A DNA stretch of 64,000 bases from Trichoplax adhaerens (lineage: Eukaryota; Animalia; Placozoa): the NCBI RefSeq assembly GCF_000150275.1, contig NW_002060943.1:11966878-12030877 (forward strand), written 5' to 3'. Under the pieces are notes generated by a model. That model was not told where the DNA came from and did not search any database. It worked only from the letters and a program-made list of their open reading frames with translations. Made by a program: the position numbers and the translations under genes. How positions within the stretch are numbered: position 1 is the stretch's first letter; each line of letters starts with the position of its first letter. Shown here piece after piece: positions 34,549-56,500 of this stretch.

Positions 34549-37500
34549 TTACGTATTATTTACAAGAAGTTGCTGTTCTCGTTGGTACTGATCTCTAAAA
34601 CAGTCACCAACGGGGAAAAATTCCCATCTTCTCTGTTGATATAAACCCCATACATAAGATTCCTAACACAAAAAGTTCGTATCAGAGTTGCAACAGAAAG
34701 CTACAATTATTTTCTCTACGAATAAAATAGAGAATACAGTTATTCAAGTATTGCTCATAGATAAATTTACCTGCCCAGTATATTCCGTTTCGGGTTTTTC
34801 AATCAAGTGTAACAAAAAAAACCTGAAACCAACAAAGCATATCACTATAGGGGTCTCATACATCAACAAACGATGTCATAATTAAGTAAATTCGGTAACA
34901 AGACACTTACATATAGTTAGCGAGATTGTGCTCTTTCTCTACATGAATATCAAACCCATGTGGTACTTTGTCAAAGTGTTCTTTTCCGATTCCACAAATG
35001 AAACATTTATTCTAAAATGTGTGTACCATGACATAGTCAACAGACTTGTAAATGTCATTAATTGTAACAAGTAATTGAAATAATAAGCACCTCTAGGTCT
35101 TCTTTGACAGATTCTTGTTTATCACGAAGTTCGCCAAAAGCATCAATAATTAAACCTATAATTGTATGTGGTTCCAATAAAAAAAATTATCAATAACTTG
35201 ATATGACTCACGTAAGAAATTTAATATGAAAGTTTTCAGTCATCCTTATACGTAATTGCTTAACCTTGCACAATAGCTAATAGAATAACGATTACAAAGA
35301 AGAAGAAGGTAAAATCAAAAGCGATTCTTTCATATTCGTATAAGTCACCATCAGCAGGATCGATCGTATCACCTATAGTTTTCAGACATTTAGCATAGGT
35401 ATGTGTGTAATAGACGTAAAAATTCGATGCAAATTTGTAATGTAATTTTATCAATTAATTATAATTTCATCTACAGTTAGATAAACTTACCAATTCCACC
35501 GCCAGATCGTAGACCAGAATTGAGATGAAACATAAAACACTACAATGAAGAATAAATAAAGGACCAAGATAGTGTTGAGTAATTGTCTTATAGCAGTATC
35601 ATGGAACTTGCTAGTTTTTGCATACCGTAAACATGTGATCACATTTGTACTCTGGTCTGCCTCTAATTTCTCTACTGTAGTACTGGCGGAAGAAGTTAAA
35701 TGCTACCACAGCGTAAATATAAATCACCACAGCCATCATTAACAGCGTCATTATTAGCTAAGATGATAAAAAAATGAGATATGTTGAAAAATTTGAGTAA
35801 TGAATTATTAGTAATGAGTAAAATATTTCGTAGGCTATACGGATTAACATTACCTGCCGGCCGTGATGAGTAACAGATTGCAATACGGTACTCAGAGTTT
35901 TATTACCGAAGCCAAAGTCGATCAAGTGCACGGCGAAGAAGAAATTATTCAAACAATTTCCAAGTAAGGAAAACAGCAAGTAAAAGAGTAGATAGATAAA
36001 ATTCTAGGATGCAACGAAAAAATAGTTTTAATCATTTTAAAAGGAATTTTTATACCTAAAAGGTAATTTTCATTATTAGCCGTTTACCCTGTCAGTACAT
36101 ATTACTCCAATCCTCCATATCCAGTATTTTAAATCCAATAATTCAGCCCTATATGGTACAATGTTAGTATTTGTGGTATGATAAAAATCCTTCATATTGG
36201 CCTTACTTTTCGCTCATTGAAATCACAAACTTACATCTTCTGTATCCGCCCCTTTTCAGAAGCGTTCTCGTCGTCTTCAATATTCAATATTTGTGTTATA
36301 CGATGGTAATCATTATCGTGTTCACTATATTTATCTCGTACCTATAGTATTATAATAGCAAATCAATTAATAATAAAAATTTATCTCTATTGCTTCTTTG
36401 TGATATTTCAGTATCTAGACAAACAGCATGAAGCTACTTACTTTGCGTTTTATAAACTTATCCCAATACATTGACGGAAATGATCTTAAATATAAAGGTA
36501 TACATATAAATTCCTAAAGGTTAGCCTGCGAATGATTATCTGTTTAGATAAACTCATTATTCCAAGGGCCTACCCGCAATTAATGACTATACCATCCCAC
36601 CAATCGCGATAATCCTGACTACGAGACTTTGTTACCCAGTAACCATCAAATTCTAACTTTCGAGCAATTTCTTTTTCTCTTTTAAATATGGCCAATGGAA
36701 CCTACACAATTATAAAATAAATTGGATAAAAGATATATACCAGAGGCCATCACTTAATGTAGCTCAAGCCGGTATGCAATATCTACATTGTCTGCTATCC
36801 AGTAAAATGTATAACCTTTAAATTCCAATAAGCAATTAGTGTTGCAATGGATGCAAGAAGATGCAAAATTGGTAGTATGATTAATGCCAAATCTAGGTAG
36901 TTATTGCTACTATCCAAAATAATACTGTTGCCCAAAGATGACAAAGTTTCATTCTTTTCAGTAACAGGTGTGACCTAAAAATCAAAATGGAAGATGATAG
37001 AATCAGATACCCTACATCCTACCTAACCAATCATACATTTTACTCCTAATGGCTATAAACTTACTTTACAAAATAGCAAGATAATATTAATTCCAAAAGC
37101 TATTAATAGAGCAATTATTCTCGATGCGTAGTAGCTTCTTGCAAATAAAGACTAAGAATACACCGTAGACATTATTAGTAGTTTTACGTTCTTATTATGA
37201 AGATATATGAATACTATGTACTAGTCCAAAATTTAACTTATTACCAAAATCGTTTGTTTCGCTGCTGCTATTTTCGGTTTATAAGAATGTTTGCCTTCAC
37301 CATCTTCCTCGTTATCCCAATCAAATTCAATCATTACATTTTCACTACTACTACCCATTATATTACTGAACGATTTGATAGTAAAATTGGCTAAATGAGT
37401 TAAAAGAAAACTGATCGCTTTGCTTCTTTTTCGAACATCAGTAAAGCTAAAAAGGCTTTTAAATTTTTGTAGATGAGGGAATATAAATTCCACACGGCTA

Positions 37501-40500
37501 GCTTTAGTATCTTTCTTAGCTAAATTACTAAAATTTAATGTGTGACTGTAATAATGTAAAGAAATGGAAAGTAAATTTAGAACACTTATTGAATTGAAGG
37601 TCAAGTAATCAAGAAAAAATAGGCGATAATAATTAATATGATGCAATGTGCACGTTACTTACTTGATCCAAATCCATAAAAGCATAAGAAATCGAGCTGA
37701 AAAGCTTATAGGTAAGATCACGCAAAAAAGCATTAATTTTAAAAAGGCTAGAGGAGAAACGGAATTTTTTATGGTTTTCCAACTTAGTTTTTTCCGTATT
37801 GACGATAGAAAAGGTCTACATAATGAAAAAATCAAGATTTTCATTACTTCAGTAACTTGATCTAGTAAAAATTAGGATTAAGCTTCATTATAAGAGTATT
37901 AGAAAGCTAAAATTTTGGTATCAATACTTTGGTGATGGAACATCAAAATCCCTTTCTCGCTTTTCCAATGCACGTTGAATCTGTTCAGCTTTAGCGGTTC
38001 CACTAATTCTAGCACCGTATTGCATCTAGTTTACGACGTACATATTACGTATATAAAGTTTAATAATTCGTTACAAGCTAGCAACGAATTTTATTTTGTA
38101 ACATTTCATTTTACAGCACACCTCAAAAATAGTATCTTCGCAAAAGCCAACGAAGTTTTCAAGTTTCTCTTTATCCGCATTGCCATTAGTCACTACGTCA
38201 CGTAAGAATGTCCGTTTCGAATCCTGTATTTAACGAAATATAATTGTCGGTAATCTTATAGCTTAATGATTTTGCAGCGGTTATTTCTTTTTAAAAGCAC
38301 GAAATTTTCTGTAATGTTTAGTGTTCGTATTAAAACATTTTAGCAACACAATACGCACTTGTATTTGTGGTTTCTGCCATTGATCAATATGTTCCGTTTT
38401 AATTTCGAAATACACTCTTTCAATTCTTTGACTCGGACCTAAGATTTCAATCCTCCCCAGACTTGATTCAAAATAAGTCATAATTCCTGAGATCAGGTCT
38501 TCCAGGTGGGCTAACCTTGGATCATCAGGAACATGGTCAGTTAGATTTGCAATTAAAACGGCTAGATTGAAACCAATTTCTTGAGCAGGCCTTTGAAATC
38601 TTTCAGTAAATTCCATATAATCTAATTTGCCATCATGATTGGTATCTGCGCATTTTAGTAAATAATCAATCTCAGTTGATGAATAAATTTTATGTTGTTC
38701 CATAGCTTTTTGAAATTCACTTGGGGATATCCATCCATCTCCATCTATATCAAATTCTTTGAAGGATTTAGAACTACCCAAATCATTTAATTTTAAAAAC
38801 ATGTTGAAAAATTTTAATATCATTTCGATGTATTCAGATGAATCTATGATCGTTTCCATTAATTGTTTAGCAATTGAGCCCGAATTAGCATTACTACCTT
38901 CTAACATACTCAATAACATGATCACCATCTCAGAATGCAATTTTAGCAATTCGCGCAATAATTCTAGATGGCAAGTCTCTTTAGATAGCTTCATTTGCAA
39001 ACATGCAAACACATGCCAAAAACCGCCTACAGCATCCCATAATCGACTATTTGACATAGTGAATTGATTAGCCACACATGGACCTTGTATATATTCAGTT
39101 AATGTCCGAAATACCTGTTTGGCTACACGAATAGCTTTACTAAAATTTTCTCTTCCTTGTATATCAATAATTTCTTTACTCGAGTAATGCCAATAGAAGT
39201 CACTAATAGATTCTTGTAAGCGCAATAAATAATCAACGGTGCAAACTATGATATTCACTGTAGTTGTATTTCCAGCCTGCGTTCGCAAATAATCTTGAAA
39301 TTTCAGATTATGACCCTCGCACAATAATTGTAGAAATCGAAATAATGAACAAATAAATTCGATATTATGGATAGCACTACCCGCAGCTACATCACTAAAT
39401 CCTAAGCCTAGTATTTCAGCTTTAGCGCTACGCTCATATGTATCCAAATCGAGAACACTACAAGATGTAGTCAATTTAGCTAAACTTGTAAAGAAATTGA
39501 CATTTCGTGTCGATTGCAAATATTTTAACATGATTTCTTGTACATTTTGATTACCACCTCGAAGTAAAGATATCCCTAACCGTAAGATACTAAGTATAGT
39601 AGGGCTTACAACACCATTACTTTCAGTTAATAGTATTAATACCATTTGTGCTGCATTGCGCTCGGCAAGTCTACTTTGCTGCTGATCTAATCGTCGTTTA
39701 GCTCTTTCACTTTCTTCAAATGTTGACGCTGATCCATCTTCAACATCATCATCGTCATCCTCTTCACTGAATTTGATACAACTCTCACTCATGATATCGG
39801 CGTAAATTTTATACAATTCGCTATCAGCGTTAAAGTCACCTTCGTGATTGCTAGCATCACGACAAATCGTTAATACCAATTGCGACAATGGATCGGACTC
39901 TAAAGGGTTGTCCTCATCTACTTTTATACTTGTTAAAGTCTCAACTAAAGCGTTGCCATCACACTTTTCACCACTTAGCCATAGCTCACGATAAACATCA
40001 ATAAAAACATTAACAGCTCGATATTTAGGCAGATTATACAATGGCACTCTAGTAAAGCATTTCATAATTGCTCGTTTGCGTTGTTGCGATAAGATTTTTT
40101 TCCATGACTTGGTGATTGTTTTTTGTGGATTATCCACAATATGTAACCGATGCAGTACACGAGAATATTCCATTATTTTTAAAGCAAGCTCTTTTTGAAC
40201 GTCATCAAATGATAATCCCAATATTAACGCAGCCGATGATGTTACAATCCGCTTAGCCCATCTTGATTCATCTCCCATCTTACGCACCTTATTTATTACA
40301 TAAAACAACACATCGCTGTCTGTTTCTTTCTGTATTAATTTTGACTTAGCTTCATGCATTAATTGTCTTTGTGCTAAATTAATAAAGTTAAGACCAACAG
40401 CTAACAGTTTTCTTACACAAACGATAACTAAGCTACTGTTGCTTTGATTGCCGTTACTGCTCTCTTGAAATAAATTATAAGATGTAAATCTGCTTCGGCC

Positions 40501-43500
40501 GACTTTTTGAAATGTTTGAAATACGCTTTCATTCAGTTGAGTTATTAAATCACTATTACTTTTACCCATAGTACTTGAATTGTATATTTGCTCTTCACGA
40601 CGAAAATTTTGAGACAGATGCCAACAACTGAACATATCAGCAACATATCGAAACAATTCTTCACCAGTCTTATTGCATCCAGTTATCCATGTTTGCTTAT
40701 GCCTATCTGTTAATTTAATTAACATTGGATAAAATGTTCTTACATTTTGAGCTAACTTGATATAATCTTCCATAACATCAACCTCATCTTGAGCATCATA
40801 ATCAGCCACTTTGGTTAATCTATCTTCGCGTCGATATAGATCGATTGCAAAATCAGTTAATTTTTTAGTTACTGGCAAGAAATGGGTATCTAGTAATGAC
40901 GCTGAACAGTGTTTGATTAAAGGTAAAGCGTAATCACCTATACGATATATCGTTGGAATATCGTGTGTTACAAAATTCGTATTAATAATACGCAGGATGT
41001 GACCTAGCAGGAAATTAGCATAATTCTCGTTGACTTTGCTACCTTCATCGGTAGTGGTTGTCGAATTCGTATATCTGTTACGTCCATTTATACAAATCCA
41101 ATGCGATATATAACTACATAACATTGGCAATATAACATCAGTAATATAAGACGATTTTTTGAATCCACAATTCGAATAAACGTAATCATCAACCATATTT
41201 AGTAATTCATTTAAATGCGGTAAATTAGAATGAGATTGAATTTCTGGGCTCTCGTCTATTGTTGGTAATGCGTAGCTATTACTAATTTCGCTCTCTGACA
41301 ACGACAGTCTTATATTGTCATTATGGGATTGCTCGTTGCTTGACTTTGCTAAGTTACCACCATGATTTGTACCAATGTTAATATCATTATAGTGGTGTGA
41401 TAAATGTTTGCTTTCAGCAGCTAAAACGTCTATATCGAAAGGGTCTGATGAAATCGGTCTAACAAATAAGGATAAATTAACAGTGGTATGATTCAATTCT
41501 AAGAATGGCATAGTAAATGAAGCCGATATTAAATTCAGGCAATTTCCAATATCAGCTAAATGTTTCTGATCTCGTATCTTGTCATTACAACCAAGTCGAT
41601 ATAAACTATTAATTATGCCGAAACATGCAGTTTTCACCTTGTCGTAAGAAAAAATTCCATTCACATCGTATTTAAATATTTGTCGAAATAATGAACACAA
41701 AATAGGTAGAAGTACGTCAAAAATATATCGCATAAGCTTTGATTCATAAGATATTACCACATTATTTAAATCTTCTGCAGCTGTCAATAGTAATTTCTGC
41801 AGATTAGATACTGAATCTTGAAACCCATGAAATATTAATGCTCCAATGTCTAGAACGGTTACTATAACTTGAATACAATCAACTACGATTGCTGGAGAAC
41901 CGAATAAATTGCAATCATTTCTAGCAATCATGGCTAATTTATAAAACAATGTTGCTACCATTTTTTTCTCTCTAGCAGTTGCTGCACCGTAGACAGTCTG
42001 CTGTTGATTTTCTGTGGCAATAAAATACGACTGATGTATTTCAAAGTAATGCTGTACAAGTGGTATGCATACTTTAGCATAAAAGTCGGTGTTAGCTACT
42101 GGATCGGTTGGGCTTTTACGCTGCTTTAGTTCATATTCTATAGGTCTAGTATAACCGATGATACTTTGTAGTAGGCAAAATGCAAATCTCTTTTCCGTTG
42201 TAAAGTATTGAGTTAATGTATCACCAAATATAGATGTACACCGATCTGCACGAGTACATTCAAATTTGAATAATTTCATGTAGCGAAGAAAGTCTCGAGT
42301 TTGGCTTAGGTATCGCTCTTTATCTTCATCAGGTAATATATGATAAGGTATCAGTATAACTGCTCCTTTGCCAGATGCTTCTAAGGCCTCAAATTGTTTC
42401 AATTGATGGGCATTATCAGCTAAAAATGCAGCTATATTTTCAGTTTCAGCACTTAATTCGATACTAGAGACGTCAAGTGGCGCTGGACAATAACCATGTG
42501 GCGATTGCGATACATTTGTATTGACGGCACTCTTTCTGTAAGGGATTAATTCTTCTTTCGTGATATCTCCATGACTTGTTATACTCCAGCCTGAGGCCAA
42601 AATTGTTCTGAGGCAATCATTCATATATTTATTTAAATGATATTTGTCCTTTTGACTTAACAAGTTATATGGAAGGAGTAAACTATCTTTTTTATCATAT
42701 TCATCGGATTCGAAACCAAAGGACCAACCTTCCGTAAATTGTTTATGTGCCCAAATGTCGTGCTTATTGCATGCGTACGAATGGATTAAGTGTTTTAATT
42801 CATCTGTTAAAATTACATTAACCGTATTAACAGGTTGCGGTATATAAATATCCTCAAAGTCGGTACTAAGGCTACGATGTAAAGATGCGGCCGGAGAAAT
42901 GGTTTGTCCTGGTTGAGAAAGGACGTAATCCGGTGATAGTGAACATGCACTACTAAACAAGCATGATAAAGCACAAGAAAATAATTTTTTCGAATAACTG
43001 CCTTTTGACAATGCTCCTAAGAGTTGTGTAAACAATACCATAGTTAACGTTTTTTCTTCTGCTGAAGCGGTACCCAGGGTACACCAACCACCGGATGAAT
43101 TATAGTATTTACCGCAACGCTCAAAATGGCTAGCAAGTATAGATAAACCTACAGAATTTTCCTCGATTAAAACCGGCATATCGTGCGCTAATATTCTCAA
43201 TGATTTAATCATTAGACTAGGCTTTAATTCACATGTAAAAGCAAGTAGAAATCCATTGACACTATCTTGACCAGCGGCATTTAAGAATGAACATTTTGAT
43301 AAACGATAACACACGTCAATAGTCTTAGCCATTAATTCTGGCTGGCTATCAGCACCATTGAATAAATGGGCGTGATTAGTTAGTAAACGCATAACACTAC
43401 CACTTATGTATCGATTAATAGCTGATATCATTTCTGTCGATAAAGGAACTTCATCCAAACTTATTGAATTAGTTAAATCAGGTAAAAATGCATAATTAAG

Positions 43501-46500
43501 CAAACGTAATAGAACCTCTTGACTGTCAACACCATAAACACGATCTAGAAATGTTACCATCGCGATTTTATGTGATGGTATCAAGCCTCTTGTTTCCAAT
43601 TCCATACAATTTTTATCTTTATTTGGCACAGGCAATGAAAATTCCAAACTGAGAACGCCAATGATTTCACGTAAAGGAATAAGACTTTGAAGTATAGCTT
43701 TAATTCGATCTCGAGTTTTAAGAGCCACCTTTCTATGGTCCGTACCAGCAATGGCTTTAACACGTATATCAGAAGGCACATACGAGTCGATAGGATTAGC
43801 GGATGAACATTTGGCAGCTAAATCTATCAGATTAGAGTAAAACGATAAAGTTTGAGTTCCAACTTCTGAACGTGATTTACCATTGACTGTAGCGGAATCG
43901 TCAGTGCTAAGAGACAACGAAATAGCTTCTCTGAATGCTTGACAGATACCCATTCCTTCACTACCCAGAGCAGGACCCAAGCATTCAGGTCGTCGTATTA
44001 GTAAGCGCACAACTAATGATGCATTTTCTTCTACAGACTCATTGTCCACCCAAATGGCATGACGAAGAAAATCAAGGTACCTTTCGCCTTCCTTAGGCTC
44101 CCAACCTGCGTCAAACATCATTTCTAGCTTACTAATAATTCTATTTCGTCTAGCTCTTAGCATCCGATTACTCCAAGTATTGGAACGATTCAGTAACGAC
44201 GACGACCTCGCTTTCGTAGATCCAGAGGTGAGCATATCAACTGCATCTGATATTGACTGTATTTTTGTACTCGGAGCAGTAAGTGCTAAAAGCGATACTA
44301 CACGCTCTAAATGATGTTTACGAAGTGCCAATACAAGCTCTAAATTATCTTTCATAGCTGCAGCGGCAACATCCAAAGGTGTTGCACCTACCATGCTTGT
44401 GCATGTAACACTGGTATCACTGTGAGATAATAAATAAGTCATATGTTCGAACATAGCACGCTGATTTTGTTGACTGGTACGACAAAAAAAGCATAAAAAT
44501 TTACAACATGCAGCTACCATAACCGGAGAGAGGCATTTTCTAGTTATCTCACTTTGTCCATCTGGTTTTGGAGAAGTTGATGCTGAAAGGTCCATAGTAG
44601 CACCTGCCCAAGATTGAAATTGCGAACCTTTTTGTTTTTCGACTTCCTTACCTAAAACGTTGACCATAACCTCCATAACTGTTTTATGTACCCCTAAAAC
44701 ACGCATTAAATCAGGATGCTGAAAGAAAATCGTATTGTTCATTAGTTCTTTCAATCCATTAGTCATTTGCATCTCTTCAGTCGCGCCCATCCTGACCGTT
44801 AAGAGCGACCTAACTGAACCTAATGCTTTCAGAAGATTTGTTACATTATCACCTCCAACATCATTGATAGTGTAGGTCTTTGTAATAGCTTCAGCAAGTT
44901 CTGCCATACCATCATGTAATCTGAACCATAAACGGAATATAGCTTTAATCAAAGCAACATCTGTAATACTTTGTTTACCCCAAGCTATTAAGACTTCAGC
45001 TAGAATTTCTTGCAATGTCGCTCTATTTGCATTAGTCAGTTGTAAATTTTTAGTCGATTTGCTACTAGACCATAACGATTTCTTTAATCTATCTATTACA
45101 GCGACACTTTCTGTAGTCTTAATGATTCCATTTCCTTTACCACAATGTTTCAGAACGTCTTTATGATAGCTTCTTAACGAGACTTGTAAATCTTTACTAC
45201 AAGGATTACTTTCCGCTGTTTCACGCGTCTTAAATGACAATAACATCAAAAGTTGAGTTCGTGGTGGAATACGAAATTCTCTTGTTTTTCTAGCAGTTAC
45301 CGCAACAGGATATTGACTATTTCTAATTTCGTTGTGCCTACGTCTTTGCTCCTTTTGCAGAGCATCGACGAAATTAGAAGTGTATGCAACCAAAGATTCA
45401 ACTCTATAACGTAGCTGGCAATCACATAAATGATCCAATAACTGACATAATTCCAATTTAACGGGTTCATCCAAGTCAGTCATTCTTAATAACCCTACTT
45501 CAAGGGTTGCCTGAGAGACAGTCATCTTCGATCCGAAATTTTGCGGATCTAGGAGTAACAACAATAGCTCCATGTCGCTTTCATCTAGTACTCCCATAAC
45601 TAACAAACAATCAGCGACTTTGAGTAACGGTACCAATAATAGACTACGACTTTCACGATGAGTTTCTTTACGACTACGATTAATGGCTTGCATATGATAT
45701 TGTAAAGTTCTAAAGACATGCTTTTTAAGTGGTGTTAAAGGAAAAAGAGGTTTATCTAACGAAGTATGCTGAATAGAATAAGACTGCGCTTGTGCGCCTT
45801 CAATTGTGCACGAAACATCGTGCGTAAGACCAGATTTCCTATGTGGGCTTAAAACCGTGCCGGGTAGGGGAGCTGCGGATAAGGAATAAGAGCCGTTACT
45901 TACTGTTGTATTATCACTTTTACTGGACGTAAAAGATATTGGTGTTGCTTTTTCCACTTTAAGAGGTAAGATGTATTCTCCTCTAGTTAATAATCTAGCT
46001 TTAGCATGTTCTTCTAAGTGTAATGATACTAATAAATCATAGTAACCAACGCGTACAACATCAGGCAGATCAAAACATTGAATACAATACATCAACTGCC
46101 ATTCATCGACGTAGTAACGAATTTTGTCAGCAACGTAAATATTACCATGAGAACACAAGGCACTGTATAATTTTAGTGTGTGGGTGTGAAAATACATTAA
46201 CTTTTCTTTTTCAATTAATTCTTGTAGATTTATACAACGATTTTCCTCGGGTATATTAATCATGACACTGTAGGATGGATCTTCGCGTTCAATTTCATAT
46301 CCATGACGCAAAGCTTTCTCGACTGTTACTAGCGAGCTTGTTTGCATTCTACACCAAGTATTTGCTTTTAGAGCTTGTAATACCGGTCGCTTAATTAGAT
46401 GAGTAGCATCGCTTTTTTGTGATAATTTATGTGAATTAGAAGTAAAACATACAGGAAGGCAGTCTTTGGAAATTCTAAATTCAATTTGAAAAAGATTTTT

Positions 46501-49500
46501 ATCATTATTAGGAGTACGAACATAGATTGCAGGATAAAGTTTGGCTCCTTCCTCAACGTCGAAATGAGTAAATTGGCAGGTAGATCCATTGAATGCGAAA
46601 TCAAGTTTACCCGTATTAACATTGGCGTAACAATCAATTAAAATATCACCTAACACGGCTGAACTTATCTTTCGTTTCCCTCTCTCTGCAATCAAATCAG
46701 AAACACGGGCCATATAGCACTCACGAGTTGTATCACTCCAGTAGGATGGAAGGGCATTGTGCAGTTTTTGCACTTGGGTAGCAGTATTAGTCGAGGATAG
46801 CTGATCATCCGAGTTGTCCGATTGTTTTTTCCAACCCTTCATAGTCGCTTTTCTCGAAGAATAATCTCCAAAGCTATTGCCGTAGTTATGTAGTTTAGAT
46901 GATATCCAACCTACATATATTTCGTACGGATCTTGTGCTTTAAAAATACGCAATGTAAAGCAATATTTTCCTAAAAATTTGGATTTTTTCCTACGGGAAC
47001 TGGAGACCATTGGTACAGTAAAATTAACTGGATAATTCAGGCGCAATAAATCGAACTTCTTATGACTTTGATCTGAGGAGTTTCGCAAGGGTTTACTATT
47101 AACTCGCAATGTTGGATGATCTCGGGTATGCATTAACCATTCAGTAACTTTAACAGTAGGGTGAGTATCGTTGATTGTTTCGAATGTAGCAATACCGCTA
47201 GCAAACCATAACGGAATACTATCAGATGTAACAATTCCAAATGGATCATAGTTCTCTTGATAGCCAAATATGTTGAAGTATTTAAATGAAGTTGGATCAT
47301 GACCAAAATTAATTCTACCACTTTGACCAACAGCCAAGCTACATGCAGGTAGATATCCAACGGTAACATCGATGTCTTCAAAAGCGTATGAGGACATTCC
47401 ATCTTGCAAAAGTTCACCATTCAACGTAAAGCTAATTTTACCAGTATCTAAATCAAGCAAGCATCCGACGATATCACCTTTATTCCAAGTCTTTCCAAAA
47501 CTTTCTGAACCGTGATTCCACTTTCGAGCTAAGAATCCGTCATAACTATATGAGTTACTACTACCACCAACTTCTTTTCCGGCTTCAAAGAACTCAGAGC
47601 ACCATCCAACTCTCATCATACCAGGACTATTAACGTGAAATTCGTAGTACCATTTGCCTCTACGAACAGCATACATCTTTTCAACACGAAAGGTCCTCAT
47701 GCTGCCGTTTTGGGCTCTATCTGTAACTTGACGTGACAAGCTTTTAGCTGAATCAACATTCAGATCGACTGCAGGCGAATCAATGGTACATCCAAATCCA
47801 ATAATGGTTCTAATAGTTTCACGGGCAGTATCGCGATTAGATTTCATAGACTGTTCATCAAGCTTTTCGTATGGTATTAACATAGGATTTCTTTTTCTAT
47901 CTCCATCTTTAGAAAGTCCGTATGACCAACCCTGTTGGATACGATCTTTTGCCCATACTTCATGAGCATTTTTAGCTAAAATTTCAACTACCTTTTCTAA
48001 ATGGTCGTTTAAAATTTCCTTTTGAGCTAGGTCTAACGGGTGGGGCTTATATCCATTAGATAAAAGGTATTTGCTATCAGGTAAATGTTGATATTTAGTA
48101 ACATTTTTACCTTCTCCAACAACGTTTATAACATAGCCTAATGCAACCAACGATTTTAACGTTTCCATAGCCATTTTAATGTCATATTCTTTTTCTTCTT
48201 GTGATAATTCAGTAAAAGGTCTCAAACAAGGATGCACTTTCAATGTATCACTTCTGTCCCTTCCAAACTTCCATCCAGCGTCTATTTTATTTCTAGCCCA
48301 GATATCGTGCATGTTAATAGCTAATTTATCGCGAAGATCGTTTAAATAAGTGGGTAAGGATACGTCCGTAGTATCGATAGGAGCTGGAATAAATACACTA
48401 TGTTCAGTTTGTGCTGTCGGACCGATGATTTCATAGCGGTAAGGGTTGCCAAGAACCATAGATTCTTGTACTCTAACCGATTCTCCATAGTCTAAGCCTT
48501 CATAAATGGGAGCATAGTGCCTTGAGTTATAATTAAATTCCCCGTAATCACCTCCTAACAGTAATCGGCATCGAACAGTGGAGGACATACTTATAGCTGG
48601 CGAGAAAAGTTGTTTGTCTATAGAAATATCTCTAAATTCACCAGTTATCAATTTCCCGTTTATGCTGAAAGTCATTGACTGCTTGCCTAAATCTAAATAA
48701 CATCCGATAACGTCGCCATTTCGAAACTGGTGAGGTGCTGTTTTCGCTGCTTCTTCATTTAATTTGTCTTCTTGAATAGATTGGTTCAATTCGTTATCTA
48801 CATCATTGTAAGAGTTATCTTCACTGTCAAAATCTGCCACACTAGAGCTTTCCATTGAATCGTCAAGGTCATCTTTAGCAATATTCAGTGAATGATTCAA
48901 TCCTAACTTTTCCTGGCCAATGAAGCAAAACATACTTCCACTTTTCTTCATTGTACGCTTAGCCTTGGAAACCGGCTTATTTTTAACTGATAGATATCGA
49001 CCGTTCGTCCACAAGTTGACGCCATCAAAACCATATGAAAATATACTATCCCCTATACCAGCACCACTCCAATTTTCACCGGCTTCAGCATGATGTACTT
49101 CCTTAATATTTCTCCAACCAATTCGTAAGTGACTGATAGGAGATGCAGCTTTATTAGCAACACATAATACCGAATCTTGGGATGGAGGTTCAACATGGTC
49201 AACAGCAACTTCAAAATACCACTTAGAATGTTGGGCAGAACCATTGAATAAGCCAACATAAATATTTGCAGTTACACTATATACGGTAACATAATATAGA
49301 TATTTTTTTCAAAATTTAGCGTTCGTAATGTAGTAAGTTATCGGGATAAACGTAAAATAGTACTTTGTTTATTCTATTTATAAATTAATCATACCTAGTT
49401 ATTTGATCTACTAATTTTGTTTGAAGTAGTAACTTCTGCTTTGGTAGTAGATTGTCACAAATAAGATTTTGATTTGCACGAACAGCAACGCCATTACATA

Positions 49501-52500
49501 CGCATATCCTCGATAGCATATCTAGAATCTACGAATACAGATTTTCAACTTTGTGATTAGAATAGAGAAATAAATTAGATAGACTAACGACGGCTGACAT
49601 AATAACACCAAAAAAGGTACCAACCCTATTATCGCGACCGTGTTTATCCAATAGATTGATCATACATTTTATATGTTGCTCTTTCACCTAAATTGGCAAC
49701 GTAAATCTAAAATTAAATCGAAATCTTGATATACGTAAACTACAGAAAAATTAAACTTACACTACTTAATGATTGCGAACTTTCCGTTAGAATACATAAA
49801 AGTACTTGTAAAAGTCCTAGACATTACAAAAAATAGTCTCATTTTTACAGTTTAAGAATTTTAACACAACATTACTTAGCTGATTCAATAGCAAGTGATA
49901 TTATACAGTCAAAAGGCATTCATGGGTTACCATCAATGTAATGTTCTCTTTCTAGCCTTTTCAGTAGCCAATCTAATGATATGGCCTCTACCAATTTAGT
50001 ACAATTGGTATGGTTCTCACGTATCATTGCAGCTACAAAAATTTAGGTATAGAAATAGTATATCATTAGAAGAGTTTAAAAATGGCTGCAGTTTTTGTAT
50101 GGGGATTAAAATTTAAATACCCTAATATCGTCTCTCTACCTAATAATTTAAATAATAGATCGTGAATTTTGAACCACATAGAGTCATTTTGAACGTCTTG
50201 AAAAGTTATCTTTGAATCGCCATCTCGACAAATTTTTCCAATAACATCAAGAACCAGGGAAATAACACCCTAATTAGAGATGAATCATTATTGCGCAATT
50301 ATAACATGGTTTATATATATATATATATTTATCGTTAAATGATATCAGTTAGATTATTTATTTTATTAATGGCCAATTCATTACCTCGTTTTGAAATAAT
50401 TCTTGGCGCTTTTTTAATGCGACCCTGTGTTTTTGCTTCACTTCATGAGCTAATCGCAACAGTAAAGAAGAACGATTTCAGTTTACATTATCACTTTACG
50501 GTAAAGTAAATCTAAGTTTGGTACCTAAATTTTCTTTTTGCCATGCAAAGTAACCAAGAAGATCGTTCAGTATAAAAACTATATATTCTAGAGCTTTGAG
50601 ATCAACATCCTCTGTCTCATGTTTGATTGTTAACTCATTATTATCATCGGAATTACCAGTACCTAAGGAACTATCACAGCAAACAAAGACAGCTTAGGTA
50701 AACAGCCAGTTGGATAAGGCAAAATATTTACCAGTCAATACGTGTAGGTATGTAAAATATTTACGTACATTTTTAATGTTTTTACTCTTACCTTAAAAAT
50801 TGATATAGAAGCTCAGAACAAACTTTGATTATGTGAGCAGTGCGAATTTCTTCAGTTTCCCCCCTAGTCACAGAGAGAGCACTGTCCATATGTCCTTCGA
50901 CTAAGAGGTGGACCTTAATGTCGGATGATTTTTTATTAGCGATAATATTAAAAGGAAATGGCTAAATTTCAAGTAGGACACAATATCAAAACAGCATTAA
51001 ACTTAGGCAATAACATTTTCAAGTTTAAAATTTTTTATGATCAACCTCTTTAATAACTTGCTTTCGCTGACCATGGGTTGTCTAAAATTTCGTAGGAAAA
51101 TACATGCGTTAATGATGCCATGGCCTACACTTTAATGGAATCACCAGCTATATACCCGTACCTGAGGACCGACCCATAAACCGGTTTTATAATGTCTAAG
51201 GAATACAAGAGAATCTCCAAACTTTATTTCTGGTATTCCCATCCCTTGGTTTATTTCATCTTTTTCGTCCCAAATACAAATATTATCCTAGTTTTGCAAA
51301 ATGATTTAATAAAATTCAGTCGGTGTAATTCGGCTATTACATTATTGTAGTAAGCTACTTTTATTGATGACAAAATCGGTAGATTGTATATATTTTATTC
51401 AATTACCTGAGAAGGTTGCAGACAAAATAATGCTGAATCTTCGGATTTCGCTGCCTCAGATGTTAGTAGACATAAATGCTTCTTATCATCTGACATACCG
51501 ATGTATTGGCCTATACATATAGCATGCAATACAGTATTACGTATTAATTTGTCAAACTAGAAGAATTTAAATGTCATCATTAAAGAATTAAGCGTATATA
51601 TTTATACCTGATATAACGTTACGCAATCGAAATGGTTGTCCCCATCGGATAAATGCGCTGCTCCACCTGAATTACATAATCGCAAAGTTAAACAAATACC
51701 CAAAGGTGCACAGTTTGCGTTGTCTATGTTACAAATATTGGATTAAATTTCTTAACGAGCCTTGGTCGTATAACTTCAATTCGCCATAGAGACTTTGTTT
51801 GACAAAAGTGATCTTGCATAAAATACAGAAGGCTACAAAAGGAAAATCTCACACTTAAATCTTTGCTTATCATCAGTGCATCGGCAGTGTAATAATTACC
51901 CAAAGTATGTTAGACGCATAATAAACAAGCTATATATCTAGTATAGTCATAGTGAGTTACCAATGCTGTTCTTCCGAGCCGCACTTATAATCATCAGGTA
52001 TCGATAAATATTCATCACCGCCGCGTATAAAGCGCATGACATCGCCACCGTTCAAGTAGCCTTGAAAGGATACGAACAAAAGCTAATAATTTAAAAATAA
52101 GATATTTCCATAACTTTTAGGAGTTATTTCAAACCTCGGCTTTTTGTTAACGCCCAACCACTCATGACAGGATTTACAATCCATACAGTTTGTTGAAATG
52201 ATGCTTGTACGGTTAAATCATTGGATGATGTCGATACATACTAATCAGAAAAGGGAATTAATGAATTAATTTAATGCAATACAACAGGTTCAGATAGAAG
52301 CAACAAAGTATGAAAAAGTTACCAAATAGCGTTCGGAATATACATTAACGAAAATAACGTTATCACCAAGTCGAACCTATACGTTTTATAGACGTTAAGA
52401 ATATATAAATAGCTTTTCAAATTGCAATAGCTAATTGACCGTAGACAAAGGAGTAAAACAAGAAGTTGCACAATGAAGTTGTAATATCTGTATATTCAAA

Positions 52501-53581
52501 ATTGATTAGCTATTACTTTTTCTCCTTCGGATCGATGATGTGACGCCGGGTGGATGGTCCACCAGCATGATTCATCTGAAAATGGAAAATTAACATTATG
52601 CCCCGAAACATAACTTTCTATGATGATGACAGACCTACGACAAATACATCGTTAAACATCGGATACAGTAATTTAAAGGCAGTTTAATGTGGTGTAATAA
52701 GACTTTTCTACTATTAATTAGGCATACAAGACCTAAAGATAAATGATCAATATATAGTACAATCATTTATTGATAAGTTCGTTAACAAAGTAAACGATCC
52801 TAACCTTGAGAATGCTGTTCCAAACCAACATCAAAAGCTAATTTGTCTGAAGTCGAACATGATGACAAACAAGATAGATACTAATAGAATTAAGAATTCA
52901 TTTTTAGAAGTATAATTGCTTTCTTTCCATTAAAAAATAGTTTCATGTTTATTAAGAAAATACATCGATAGCTCATAGGAACTTATTTTCAGAACTATAT
53001 TGCATTCATTGGGATTAAATAATAATTTCAAGTTAGTTAAAAATGGGAGTAGGTACATGATAAATACCTTTCTACTACTCGTATGGCGTAGCAGTACTGC
53101 ATGACCATATAATAGTGTTCTCCTACCAGCTTGGCTACCACTCTGTAACAATTATAAAATTAAGAAAATCAACGTTATTTCTTCTATACGGTCTTGTTCA
53201 TAACAATAATTATAATGTCGACATTACTATTGTGCACAGCTTAGAAGAGATTACTTACACCAGTAACGGAGGTAGTAGCCACGACCCTTTCTTGTAATGC
53301 TCTAACCGACATAGCTTGTTCCAAGATAAATACACATAGGGACATATTTGGTAATCGTTCCTAGTTTATTCAACAAAATCTAGGGTAAGCTTATCGAGCA
53401 GTTGAAGTTTTGAGTAAATTTCTTGCTGAAATAAAGGGAATGGAATTATTCTAACCGTATTAATCCAATGTTCTAGATGGCATAGTCTACTTCCAAAACC
53501 AACCGCAGCTAATATGGCGCGACATTGTTGTATACTATCATATTTATTTGCAAGATTGCATGATAAAGTAATAGAATCTTC
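34549..53581 (-). CDS. RYR: Ryanodine receptor (intracellular Ca2+-release channel), ~5000 aa, at least 40 coding exons; the short first coding exon is not resolved (upstream of 53581)
   Basis: N-terminal exons [46 protein letters not shown] (MIR domains). SPRY and RyR repeats, [22 protein letters not shown] and an EF-hand pair. Pore [11 protein letters not shown]6 [43 protein letters not shown]-terminal [14 protein letters not shown]. Stop TAA at 34551-34549. Confidence 0.97.
38359..49276 (-). other. Single 10,918-nt coding exon of the RyR gene
   Basis: Acceptor AG at 49278-49277 and donor GT at 38358-38357. The frame is continuously open (includes the 3577-aa ORF) from SPRY1 through the EF-hands. 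Confidence 0.9.
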
Positions 53582-56500
53582 CTAATCAATACAAAACAAA
53601 TGAGCAACATTATTCGTCATCAGCAATTTTTTATCCTAGTATCATATCGTTCAAATTATAACAAGCCCAACTTGACTAAAACATATTCGCAAATAATATT
53701 CTAGTTAAATGTAATCCTTAATCAGGATAGTGCGATCATTGGATTCCTCTTTTTAGATATTTGAAATTAAAGATGCTCATCTATTTTACTAGATTCATTA
53801 AATTGACAAGACCGGAGGAAAATTGCAATGGCAGCAGTTAGTAAAAATTTACGAATGTATTCATTCTACAAAGGGAAATGTGATGCTGTCCAGGCTAGCC
53901 AGATCTAACAACCATGATTACTCTCCTCTAGTTGCATAACAAGTTTTCGAGTAACAAGCATTAACCGCAGAAGACAATTCATTGATGTATCATACTATCG
54001 TTACTTATCGTAAAATTGTAAATAGGAAAATTAAAAAGACTACATGAAATATAACACTATGAGCCTATTGTCAGGTTTGTCCTCCTCGACATCAACCTAC
54101 AGTACGACTCAAATAACTGACGATCTCACCGTGGTTAGGAAGCACTAATACTAGTCTCTCTTTAGACAAAAGTGAATCCAAACTTTGTTAAAATGTCAGC
54201 CAATTTATAACAAATCTACATAAGCATTCATTATATAATTATTAGTTTATAGATAGTATTACAAAACTAAGCAGTTATCTATCTAAGTATGTATGTATGT
54301 ATGTATCTTTCATAGATAATGGTATTATCGCAATATCGCAAAGAATGCTATCTAACAAAAACAAGATCAGTAATAGTTTACGAAAGTACTGCTCGGCGAC
54401 ACGATGGAAAGTTGAAAAATCGAAAGTGTTACAACTCGATCCAATGGCTAGATTACAATTCTAAAAGGGGATATTATTTAAATAAGAGAGATTTCAATGG
54501 AAATATCAATTATTATTGATATAAGACGATTCTACAATTGAACATGGCATCTAATCATCTGATTTTGCATTCTTTGTCTGTTAATGCAATTTTTAACCTA
54601 TTTGTAGATTGGTTTCAATGCCAGGTGTGACTTACTATCTCAAGCAAGTAAAATAAAACTGATTCCATATCACGCGTGCACTACTTTACTTTGGCTTTAT
54701 ACGGCTTCAATTACTACAATGGGCACGCGTAGATTGAAAATGTAGGGTAGATTTTGTATTATAATAGTATTAATTATAAAAGCATTAATACGAGCGAAAC
54801 CTTTATTGTGGGGAGTCATTTCCACTTTAGAGGTGTTTGGAAATTGACTAGAATGTTAATTTAGTCCACAAAGGCAATACAAGATTTCTACAACGGGAAA
54901 GCAGAGCTAGTTGTTTCTACTCGGTACAGAATAGCTTCGATACAGTACATCGCTATTTTCTAGAATATTTTTTGAACTCTTCCTAGTTTATCTACCATGT
55001 TGAAGTTATTTTTCAACAACTATGTTTGATCAGACGTTATTATCGTAGTAAGAAATTAATATCCCCTTGATATGATATTGTTCCATTAGATGGAACAATA
55101 ACGTCATTTTCATCCTGAAATAAGTAATGCATGATATATTTCGGTATCTCCAGGGGCTACCAATGGAATCCTTTAATGATGATTGATTAGTTTTATTAAG
55201 CCCGAAAAATAAAGCCATCCTTTTATTCATCTGTCAGAGTATTCAATGGCGGCGATAGCAATAACTATTGCAGCAAGTCTTAGACCGGAAATGGATTAAG
55301 AAAGCAGCAATCCATTACTAAGCAACATGGGCTTGATCATCAAGAATTGATATTTGTACAAGGCACATCATTCATATCAAGGACAATTTGTCAGCTTTAT
55401 GAGGTAATGATGCCATTGATCGATTTCTGTCGTCTGCCGATGATGATGACGATACCATCATGTAGATACGACACTGGAGGATAAAATTAACCGCCCATTT
55501 TTTCTCAAATAATTTCATGTTTCTACGGTAAAAACAGTCGTGACAACCCTTTTCATAGATCAAGTTAGCTTACCATGGAATCTATGGAGGCCTATTGCGA
55601 TTTGATGACATCAACTGTGATCATTACAAGCGCTTAAAACGCTAGTAAGAGTAGTCTTCACATAACGTTGAAATGCTAGGAAAGTGTAGAAGTAGTTGAA
55701 TGATAGGCTATAAATTAAGTCGATCAATATTACACCACCGTTAATCTACAGTACGTATACTTGAAATTAAATTAAGATTTGGTTACATTGCTAACCATCA
55801 TTCAAGCCTATTGGCGACAAATTTTCTTTTCTCTTGAGTAAATTGAAAGTAGTGTACAATCCGTACTTGTATTTAGTATCATGGTAGAAAAGGAATTGAG
55901 CAAGATAGCAAGTCATGGCGCTAATTAACGACTTAAAATGAAGCCATGAACCCTTGACTCAAACGCGCTTACAAATTAACCGGTAAATTGCGGCATGCGT
56001 TGTATAAATTAAATTATTATATTATATAATTAGAATAACTTTAAAGTGTCCAGTAGTCTCGAAGTTTGTCTATCGTCTAGAAAGTTATTATTGAGAATAT
56101 GAAAAGTAGAAAATCAACCGAAGGGAAAAGAGGATGTCAAATGAGTTGTTGAAACTTGCCTCAAAGTGAATGGTTTTCATTTCTACCGTAATCTCCTAAA
56201 GACAAATGTTCATTATATATGTTTTATTGATTGGGAATCTCTCATTTCAGTATAAACTAGCTCATCTGGCGCTTTATTAATTAAAATAAGTGCCACATGG
56301 TCATTATCCGTAACCCACAAAAGCGAAATTCACAGTAGTTATTAGATATACAGTGCTGTAGTTCAAGAAATAGAATAGAAAGACCTTCGAACACATGGAT
56401 GAAATTATTTGACATCATGAAGGATACTTGCTCTACCTTGAGTAAACTTCATTCTCGAATAAATGTAAAAGAATTGAGATTACTGTACATAAGGCGATAC

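What the first reader, a model, noticed from the sequence alone, without database searches (positions are those of the whole stretch)
38359..49276. A 10.9-kb intron-free block in the middle of an otherwise intron-dense ryanodine receptor gene
Seen: 21 small exons in ~4.2 kb, then one 10,918-nt exon encoding ~3640 aa with no stop codon, then 18 small exons in ~3.7 kb. The neighbouring genes (NUP133 ~39 exons, ERO1 12) are also finely split. Known: vertebrate RYR genes have ~105 exons and this segment (SPRY1 to EF-hand) is split into many dozens of them. Inference: dozens of adjacent introns were erased together, as expected from recombination/gene conversion with a long reverse-transcribed mRNA copy. 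The 3'-most introns are retained, which does not fit simple poly(A)-primed, 3'-biased loss and points to internal priming or a double crossover with a >11-kb cDNA.
Basis: partly seen in the sequence, partly recalled or inferred. Interest (0 to 1): 0.8.

Follow-up and report, generated by a model that had tools for sequence, protein, structure and literature searches.

The report
Giant intron-free exon in Trichoplax RyR
The ryanodine-receptor calcium-channel gene of the placozoan Trichoplax carries one real 10.9-kb exon where fish, sea cucumber and annelid genes have dozens of introns, a clear and very large case of many neighbouring introns being removed together, and the same is seen in other giant genes of this genome.

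Summary
The window is Trichoplax adhaerens. The public RyR model (TRIADDRAFT_52741, 4949 aa) maps as 21 small exons, one 10,918-nt exon (49276-38359, minus strand) and 18 small exons, all GT-AG. An independent Trichoplax sp. H2 assembly has the same structure.

Intron maps of fish, sea cucumber and annelid RyR genes show that 26 of the 39 Trichoplax introns sit at the same position and phase as a bilaterian intron. Both borders of the giant exon are among them.

Inside the block, at least 66 fish, 10 sea cucumber and about 19 annelid introns have no Trichoplax counterpart. Ten of these are shared by fish and annelid. Most sites align without gaps, so the introns are precisely absent. Fisher tests give p = 3e-15 and 1e-5.

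The mechanism is inferred, not shown.

The block is not unique. At least ten dynein heavy chain genes and two spectrin-repeat genes of this genome hold open frames of 1,856-3,633 codons.

This is a new and extreme member of a known kind ("extraordinarily large exons"). Not done: a sponge or unicellular outgroup, other placozoans, and RNA evidence.

The parts
34552..54668 (-). Coding span of the ryanodine receptor gene (TRIADDRAFT_52741, 4949 aa, 40 coding exons)
   Evidence: Exact mapping of public protein P0001 onto the window. All 39 junctions are GT-AG.
49395..54668 (-). 5' flank: exons 1-21 (aa 1-640), each 33-170 nt, with 20 introns among them. Ten of the 21 introns from here to the block border are at fish positions.
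49277..49394 (-). Intron 21 (118 nt, phase 2 at aa 640), the 5' border of the block. Ancestral: same position and phase in fish and sea cucumber.
38359..49276 (-). Giant exon 22, 10,918 nt, aa 641-4280 (SPRY1 to the EF-hand pair). GC is 0.365, the same as the small exons, and GC1>GC2>GC3 holds throughout.
38284..49308 (-). Full stop-free frame (3,675 codons) that contains the giant exon
48763..48996 (-). 78-aa Trichoplax-only acidic insertion. It begins three codons after Gly732, the site of the ancestral phase-1 intron (codon G|GT at 49002-49000). It is coding, not a live intron.
47779..48393 (-). RyR repeats 1 and 2 (Pfam PF02026) inside the giant exon
42256..42846 (-). RyR repeats 3 and 4 (Pfam PF02026) inside the giant exon
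39025..39369 (-). RIH_assoc domain, unbroken here. Fish and annelid both have introns in it, at aa 3965 (phase 1) and aa 3995 (phase 0).
38224..38358 (-). Intron 22 (135 nt, phase 0 at aa 4280), the 3' border of the block. Same position and phase in the annelid.
34552..38223 (-). 3' flank: exons 23-40 (aa 4281-4949, channel domain). Counting the border intron there are 18 introns, and 16 are at bilaterian positions.

Best explanation
The central 10.9 kb of the Trichoplax RyR gene is one true exon. It arose in the placozoan lineage when a run of roughly 55-75 ancestral introns was removed precisely. The most likely route is gene conversion or a double crossover between the gene and a long cDNA copied from spliced RyR mRNA, in one or a few long-tract events. 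The exchange points lay in the short exons just inside two ancestral introns (aa 640 and aa 4280), so the 21 introns upstream and the 18 downstream survived. The gene's remaining introns are about 100 nt long and are presumably recognised by intron definition, so an 11-kb exon does not disturb splicing. Shown here: the exon is real, bilaterian orthologues have introns all through it, and the flanks are ancestral. Inferred: that the placozoan ancestor had those introns, that a cDNA was the agent, and that the events were few.
For: The exon and gene model are exact, and a second assembly agrees. In the flanks, 10 of 14 fish introns at the 5' side, 10 of 12 at the 3' side, 15 annelid introns and 3 of 3 sea cucumber introns share position and phase with Trichoplax, including both borders. 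In the block, Trichoplax has none against 9 + 57 fish, 10 sea cucumber and about 19 annelid introns. Ten of these are shared by fish and annelid (aa 3687, 3724, 3756, 3805, 3888, 3913, 3965, 3995, 4038, 4100), and six by fish and sea cucumber. Fisher tests give 2.8e-15 (20/26 against 0/66) and 1.1e-5 (9/9 against 0/10). The introns are precisely absent, with no gap within 5 columns at 38 of 52 and 9 of 10 sites. Composition and codon periodicity match the small exons, so the block is neither foreign nor hiding introns. The genome holds only one RyR gene. Dynein heavy chain genes of the same genome show 5' introns always spared and giant frames that often run to the 3' end. That is the classical pattern of cDNA-mediated loss, with internal cases alongside. 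Concerted loss of adjacent introns that yields abnormally large, often internal exons is described in PMC2614967 and PMC2395259.
Against: No outgroup to placozoans plus bilaterians was mapped, so the presence of these introns in the placozoan ancestor is inferred from the behaviour of the flanks. No RNA evidence was obtained. No reverse transcriptase source or processed pseudogene was looked for. The loss is internal rather than 3'-terminal, which the simplest poly(A)-primed model does not predict. One event cannot be told apart from several. The only other placozoan available, H2, is nearly identical, so the event is undated.
Confidence: 0.78

Rival explanations
1. Ancestral intron poverty. 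The common ancestor of placozoans and bilaterians already had a giant central exon, and the bilaterian stem lineage later filled it with introns.
For: No non-bilaterian outgroup was mapped. Introns of the IP3R paralogues in the shared RIH_assoc domain are not at the RyR positions, so they give no older anchor. A long exon offers more room for new introns than exons of about 100 nt.
Against: It needs at least 66 gains in the block against at most 6 fish-specific introns in the flanks. That is about 4 times the density per residue. It also needs 10 gains in the bilaterian stem within aa 3640-4280 and none in the equally long 3' flank, where 9 of 9 fish+annelid introns are also in Trichoplax. Giant frames recur in many unrelated long genes of this genome, which points to a process in the placozoan lineage.
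Confidence: 0.07
2. Real loss, but gradual. Many separate events (single-intron cDNA repair, microhomology-mediated genomic deletions) happened to clear a contiguous block, perhaps under selection against splicing load in a gene of about 100 introns.
For: The number of events cannot be read from one lineage. The 78-aa insertion exactly at the aa 732 intron site could mark an intron handled differently from the rest.
Against: The borders are sharp: none of at least 66 positions is kept inside the block, against about 77% kept immediately outside. Independent losses would leave stragglers inside and gaps outside. Genomic deletions rarely remove introns exactly, yet most sites show no indel.
Confidence: 0.13
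3. Artefact: cDNA contamination, a mis-assembly, or unannotated in-frame introns hidden inside the open frame.
For: No transcript data were examined here.
Against: Two independent assemblies agree base for base, and the flanking introns are contiguous with the block. The block has 3,675 codons without a stop in DNA of 36% GC, and exon-like codon periodicity in every 900-nt slice. The only large lineage-specific insertion has a non-functional donor and no in-frame stops, against 6 and 12 in the other two frames.
Confidence: 0.02

Closest known systems
Extraordinarily large exons from mRNA-mediated concerted intron loss (Niu, Hou & Li 2005, as cited in PMC2614967 and PMC2395259)
   Same: A run of adjacent introns is missing precisely. 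The resulting exon is internal and far longer than its neighbours. Orthologues keep the introns.
   Different: The scale is much larger: at least 66 vertebrate intron positions and 10.9 kb in one block. It also lies in a genome and a gene whose remaining introns are highly conserved with bilaterians. No such description of this gene turned up in the searches.
Internal intron loss in Cryptococcus (PMC2395259)
   Same: Simultaneous loss of adjacent introns occurs mostly as internal islands that spare the 3'-terminal intron. The explanations offered there are internal crossover, self-priming, or recombination of a 3'-loss allele with a wild-type allele.
   Different: Those events remove a few introns over at most about 4 kb in a fungus and were seen between close relatives. 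Here the event is old, undated and roughly ten times larger.
Vertebrate and other bilaterian RYR genes
   Same: They are orthologous proteins with the same domain order. 26 of the 39 Trichoplax introns are at identical positions and phases.
   Different: Bilaterian genes are split all through SPRY1 to EF-hand, about one intron per 55 residues in fish. Trichoplax has none there.
Dynein heavy chain and spectrin-repeat genes of the same genome
   Same: They hold stop-free frames of 1,856-3,633 codons next to finely split 5' parts.
   Different: [quoted passage not shown] Loss of ancestral introns was not tested for them here.

Membership tests
Ryanodine receptor (RyR) family | Four RyR repeats, three SPRY domains, junctional solenoid, RIH and RIH_assoc domains, EF-hand pair | tested here: met
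   Pfam scan of the giant exon: RyR 4.5e-99 (4 stretches), SPRY (3 stretches), Jsol 3e-89, RIH 5e-41, RIH_assoc 1e-30, EF-hand_7 2e-12.
Ryanodine receptor (RyR) family | N-terminal Ins145_P3_rec/MIR domains and C-terminal RR_TM4-6 plus Ion_trans channel domain in the same protein | tested here: met
   Precomputed Pfam domains of P0001 include PF08709, PF02815, PF06459 and PF00520. These parts map to the small-exon flanks.
Ryanodine receptor (RyR) family | Closest relatives are bilaterian RyRs over the full length | tested here: met
   The best hits are hemichordate, mollusc and echinoderm RyRs at about 36% identity over 79% of the exon. Identity is 0.39-0.52 in all three gene parts.
mRNA-mediated concerted intron loss (extraordinarily large exon) | Orthologues carry introns at many sites inside the exon | tested here: met
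   At least 66 fish, 10 sea cucumber and about 19 annelid introns map inside aa 641-4280.
mRNA-mediated concerted intron loss (extraordinarily large exon) | The introns were present in the ancestor (loss, not gain elsewhere) | tested here: inconclusive
   Support is indirect: flank retention is 20/26 and 9/9 against 0/66 and 0/10 in the block. No non-bilaterian outgroup was mapped.
mRNA-mediated concerted intron loss (extraordinarily large exon) | Exact removal, with no residual or missing codons at the old junctions | tested here: met
   38 of 52 fish sites and 9 of 10 sea cucumber sites have no gap within 5 alignment columns. The exception is the 78-aa insertion at the aa 732 site.
mRNA-mediated concerted intron loss (extraordinarily large exon) | The lost introns are adjacent, with sharp borders | tested here: met
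   Every mapped position between aa 640 and aa 4280 is empty, and both borders are conserved introns.
mRNA-mediated concerted intron loss (extraordinarily large exon) | 3' bias expected from poly(A)-primed cDNA | tested here: not met
   18 introns in the last 2,007 nt of CDS are kept. Internal blocks are nonetheless common in the literature on this kind (PMC2395259) and among this genome's dynein genes.
mRNA-mediated concerted intron loss (extraordinarily large exon) | A reverse transcriptase source and processed copies in the genome | not tested
   No RyR retrocopy exists: all four RyR-domain hits in the genome are in this exon. Reverse transcriptase genes were not surveyed.

The most novel reading that the evidence does not exclude
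Placozoans have, or had, an unusually long-tract pathway that replaces genomic DNA with spliced-mRNA copies and strips introns in blocks of 6-11 kb, mainly from their very longest genes. Here that means RyR, at least ten dynein heavy chains and spectrin-family genes, in a genome that otherwise keeps most ancestral introns. This would point either to a highly processive reverse transcriptase or RNA-templated repair, or to selection against the splicing load of genes with 80-100 introns.
Probability: 0.3. Interest if true: 0.65.

Novelty: new member of a known kind. Interest (0 to 1): 0.5.

Why it matters
Trichoplax is a standard reference for conserved animal gene structure. This gene shows that the same genome can also erase some 60-70 consecutive introns over 11 kb while leaving the neighbouring ones untouched. 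That makes it one of the cleanest and largest natural examples of concerted intron loss. Together with the dynein and spectrin-family blocks, it gives a tractable set of loci for three questions: how long conversion tracts can be, why 5' introns and sometimes 3' introns escape, and whether very long genes are under pressure to shed introns. On the practical side, intron-based phylogenetic characters and exon-count statistics for placozoans should treat such genes separately.

Tried and rejected
1. Other placozoans. Three word searches returned only T. adhaerens and the near-identical H2. No Hoilungia or other lineage was found, so the event could not be dated.

2. Full-length bilaterian loci. 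Lottia and Ptychodera proteins exceed the 5,000-aa limit of the look-up. The Anneissia and Parambassis genes exceed 100 kb. Several isoforms were not on record. I therefore tiled the gene with partial models. Fish coverage lacks about aa 1150-1650, and protostome coverage exists only from aa 3640 onward.

3. IP3R paralogues as an internal outgroup. Their RIH_assoc introns lie 8 nt and 7 codons away from the RyR positions, so they are not shared and not informative.

4. Hidden in-frame introns. Only one 90-nt window has GC of 0.22 or less, and it lies in conserved coding sequence. The 78-aa insertion was rejected as a live intron.

5. A second RyR copy or retrocopy as a conversion donor. None exists in the genome.

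6. The value 3821 in the open-frame column is an artefact. The real frame is 3,076 codons.

7. With the DNA look-ups exhausted it could not have yielded outgroup introns.

Full-length comparisons used the public protein P0001 by id, and window sequence was sent only as single-exon references. No human or primate locus was fetched.
Full report
**What is there.** The window is from Trichoplax adhaerens. The translated block is 100% identical to the public protein TRIADDRAFT_52741 / XP_002109077 (P0001, 4949 aa), which UniRef labels "Ryanodine receptor 3". On the minus strand a frame of 3,675 codons runs from 49308 to 38284 without a stop. The next longest stop-free frame in the whole 64-kb window is 155 aa. 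Its 3,639-residue translation carries four RyR repeats, three SPRY domains, the junctional solenoid, RIH, RIH_assoc and an EF-hand pair.

**Gene structure.** I mapped P0001 onto the window by exact matching. This gives 40 coding exons: 21 small ones (aa 1-640), the 10,918-nt exon (aa 641-4280) and 18 small ones (aa 4281-4949). All 39 junctions are GT-AG. The small exons have a median length of 102 nt and the introns a median of 100 nt. At the flank density of 39 introns per 3,929 nt of CDS, about 108 introns would be expected in the block (Poisson probability of zero = 9e-48).

**Is it an artefact, or does it hide introns?** Trichoplax sp. H2 is an independent assembly. It carries the same 40-exon gene with the same giant exon. 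The two loci are 99.86% identical over 26 kb, and the proteins differ at 2 residues. The giant exon has the same GC content as the small exons (0.365 in both, against 0.29 in introns). The coding pattern GC1>GC2>GC3 holds in every 900-nt slice.

- Only one 90-nt window falls to a GC of 0.22 or less, and it lies in sequence conserved with the annelid.
- The only large Trichoplax-specific insertion is 78 aa (window 48996-48763). It has no in-frame stop against 6 and 12 in the other two frames, and its would-be donor is GTCGAT. C at donor position +3 occurs in none of the gene's 39 introns.
- I therefore take the exon as continuous. No RNA data could be reached.

**Comparative intron map.** Full-length invertebrate RyR loci could not be fetched because of protein-length and gene-length limits. 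I tiled the gene with partial gene models and their own genomic loci:

| Model | Region of the gene | Protein / locus |
|---|---|---|
| Pampus (fish) | N-terminal | P0125 / L004 |
| Apostichopus (sea cucumber) | SPRY1-RyR12 | P0122 / L005 |
| Pleuronectes (fish, RyR1b) | middle | P0207 / L015 |
| Tetraodon (fish) | C-terminal half | P0281 / L002 |
| Paralvinella (annelid) | C-terminal third | P0282 / L003 |

Each protein was mapped on its own locus to get intron positions and phases. These were then projected on P0001 by pairwise and multiple alignment.

**The flanks are ancestral.**

- In the 5' part, 10 of 14 fish introns share position and phase with Trichoplax (aa 11, 112, 137, 175, 408, 479, 522, 556, 596, 640). 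All 3 sea cucumber introns there do so as well.
- In the 3' part, 10 of 12 Tetraodon introns and 15 annelid introns do so.
- In total, 26 of the 39 Trichoplax introns have a bilaterian counterpart.
- Both borders of the giant exon are such conserved introns. The one at aa 640 (phase 2) is shared with fish and sea cucumber, and the one at aa 4280 (phase 0) with the annelid.

**The block is empty only in Trichoplax.** Between the two borders Trichoplax has no intron. Pampus has 9, Pleuronectes 57 (all between aa 1653 and 4100), the sea cucumber 10 (aa 731-1223) and the annelid about 19 (aa 3638-4280).

- Six positions are shared by fish and sea cucumber.
- Ten are shared by fish and annelid (aa 3687, 3724, 3756, 3805, 3888, 3913, 3965, 3995, 4038, 4100). 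These ten therefore date at least to the bilaterian ancestor.
- Fish introns also found in Trichoplax: 20 of 26 in the flanks against 0 of 66 in the block (Fisher p = 2.8e-15).
- Fish+annelid introns also found in Trichoplax: 9 of 9 in the 3' flank against 0 of 10 in the adjacent, equally long end of the block (p = 1.1e-5).
- At 38 of 52 fish sites and 9 of 10 sea cucumber sites there is no alignment gap within five columns, so the introns are precisely absent.

**Loss or gain?** No outgroup to placozoans plus bilaterians could be mapped. According to PMC7582152, RyRs are absent from cnidarians and ctenophores but present in sponges, choanoflagellates and Capsaspora.

I tried the IP3R paralogues of Trichoplax itself as an older anchor. 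Their introns in the shared RIH_assoc domain lie 8 nt and 7 codons from the RyR positions, so they say nothing.

The case for loss therefore rests on the flanks. Gain in the bilaterian stem would have to put at least 66 introns into the block while adding at most 6 to the flanks. It would also need 10 stem gains in aa 3640-4280 and none in the next 669 residues. I put this rival at about 7%.

**Mechanism.** A contiguous run of precisely removed introns between untouched neighbours is the recognised signature of recombination with a reverse-transcribed spliced mRNA. The literature describes such concerted losses, the abnormally large exons they leave, and the fact that these exons are often internal (PMC2614967; PMC2395259, which cites Niu et al. 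2005).

The retained 3' introns can be explained in three ways:

- crossover points inside the gene;
- self-primed or internally primed cDNA;
- a 3'-loss allele that later recombined with a wild-type allele (PMC2395259).

The data here cannot choose among them, nor between one event and a few. The introns that remain are about 100 nt long. This fits intron-definition splicing, under which long exons are tolerated (PMC2614967).

**Genome context (new).** The genome has only one RyR gene and no retrocopy. The IP3R paralogues are finely split, with open frames of 93-143 aa. Probing other very long genes shows that the RyR block is not unique.

- Dynein heavy chain genes sit in stop-free frames of 3,621, 3,316, 3,102, 3,099, 3,076, 2,872, 2,792, 2,674, 2,245, 2,144, 1,856 and 889 codons. 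Five of these I checked directly on fetched DNA.
- The N-terminal tail domain of these genes is always in small frames.
- About five of the dynein blocks reach the C-terminus, two keep one last intron, and four keep several 3' introns as RyR does. About five dynein genes remain finely split.
- Two spectrin-repeat genes hold frames of 2,445 and 3,633 codons.
- BEACH, PI3K-like kinase and myosin genes are mostly finely split, with maxima of 812-1,390 codons.

The always-spared 5' ends and the frequent 3'-terminal blocks are what a pool of poly(A)-primed cDNAs would produce. This supports the mechanism for RyR. Loss of ancestral introns was not tested for these other genes.

**An odd detail.** The 78-aa acidic insertion in SPRY1 starts three codons after Gly732. 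Its codon G|GT lies exactly at the phase-1 intron site shared by fish and sea cucumber. It may be an exonised remnant of that intron, or an ordinary loop insertion at an old exon junction. This is unexplained.

**Verdict.** This is a very large and very clean new example of a known kind of event, set in an otherwise intron-conservative gene, and it is one of a set of similar blocks in the longest genes of this genome.

Full-length work used the public protein by id.
- No human or primate locus was fetched.
- The large representative-protein search was left unused.

Noticed in passing
G000: C1413:6578807-6589669 (-), C1400:925422-935369 (+), C1414:9552210-9561506 (-), C1410:655307-664534 (+), C1411:1204384-1212999 (-): Dynein heavy chain genes lie in stop-free frames of 3,621, 3,316, 3,099, 3,076 and 2,872 codons. 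Seven more dynein genes have frames of 889-3,102 codons. The N-terminal tails are always in small exons, and about five dynein genes remain finely split.
   Followed up: partly
G000: C1386:380798-387916 (+) and C1393 near 791524-791829 (-): Spectrin-repeat genes with open frames of 2,445 and 3,633 codons. Another spectrin-repeat gene, at C1403:1048422-1056566, is finely split.
   Followed up: no
window 48763-48996 (-): A 78-aa Trichoplax-only acidic insertion in SPRY1 starts three codons after the codon (G|GT, 49002-49000) that holds a phase-1 intron in fish and sea cucumber. It is coding, not a live intron, and may be an exonised intron remnant.
   Followed up: partly
G000: C1410:2346310-2346710 (-), C1411:1109371-1109544 (+), C1400:1112671-1112874 (+): Three IP3R-like loci carry RIH_assoc in small exons. 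In the C1410 gene the introns lie after ...NLDLQ and after ...CHENQ, which is 8 nt and 7 codons from the bilaterian RyR intron sites, so they are not shared.
   Followed up: partly
   Followed up: partly
proteins P0225, P0201, P0268: Metagenome-derived RyR fragments were called as single long ORFs: 2,687 aa on a 17.9-kb contig, 2,546 aa on an 8.7-kb contig and 1,400 aa on a 312-kb contig. They could be transcripts, or unknown eukaryotes that also have very long RyR exons.
   Followed up: no
window 53582-54635 (-): The first intron of the gene model is 1,054 nt, ten times the gene's median. It follows an 11-codon first exon, and its position matches the first fish intron.
   Followed up: no
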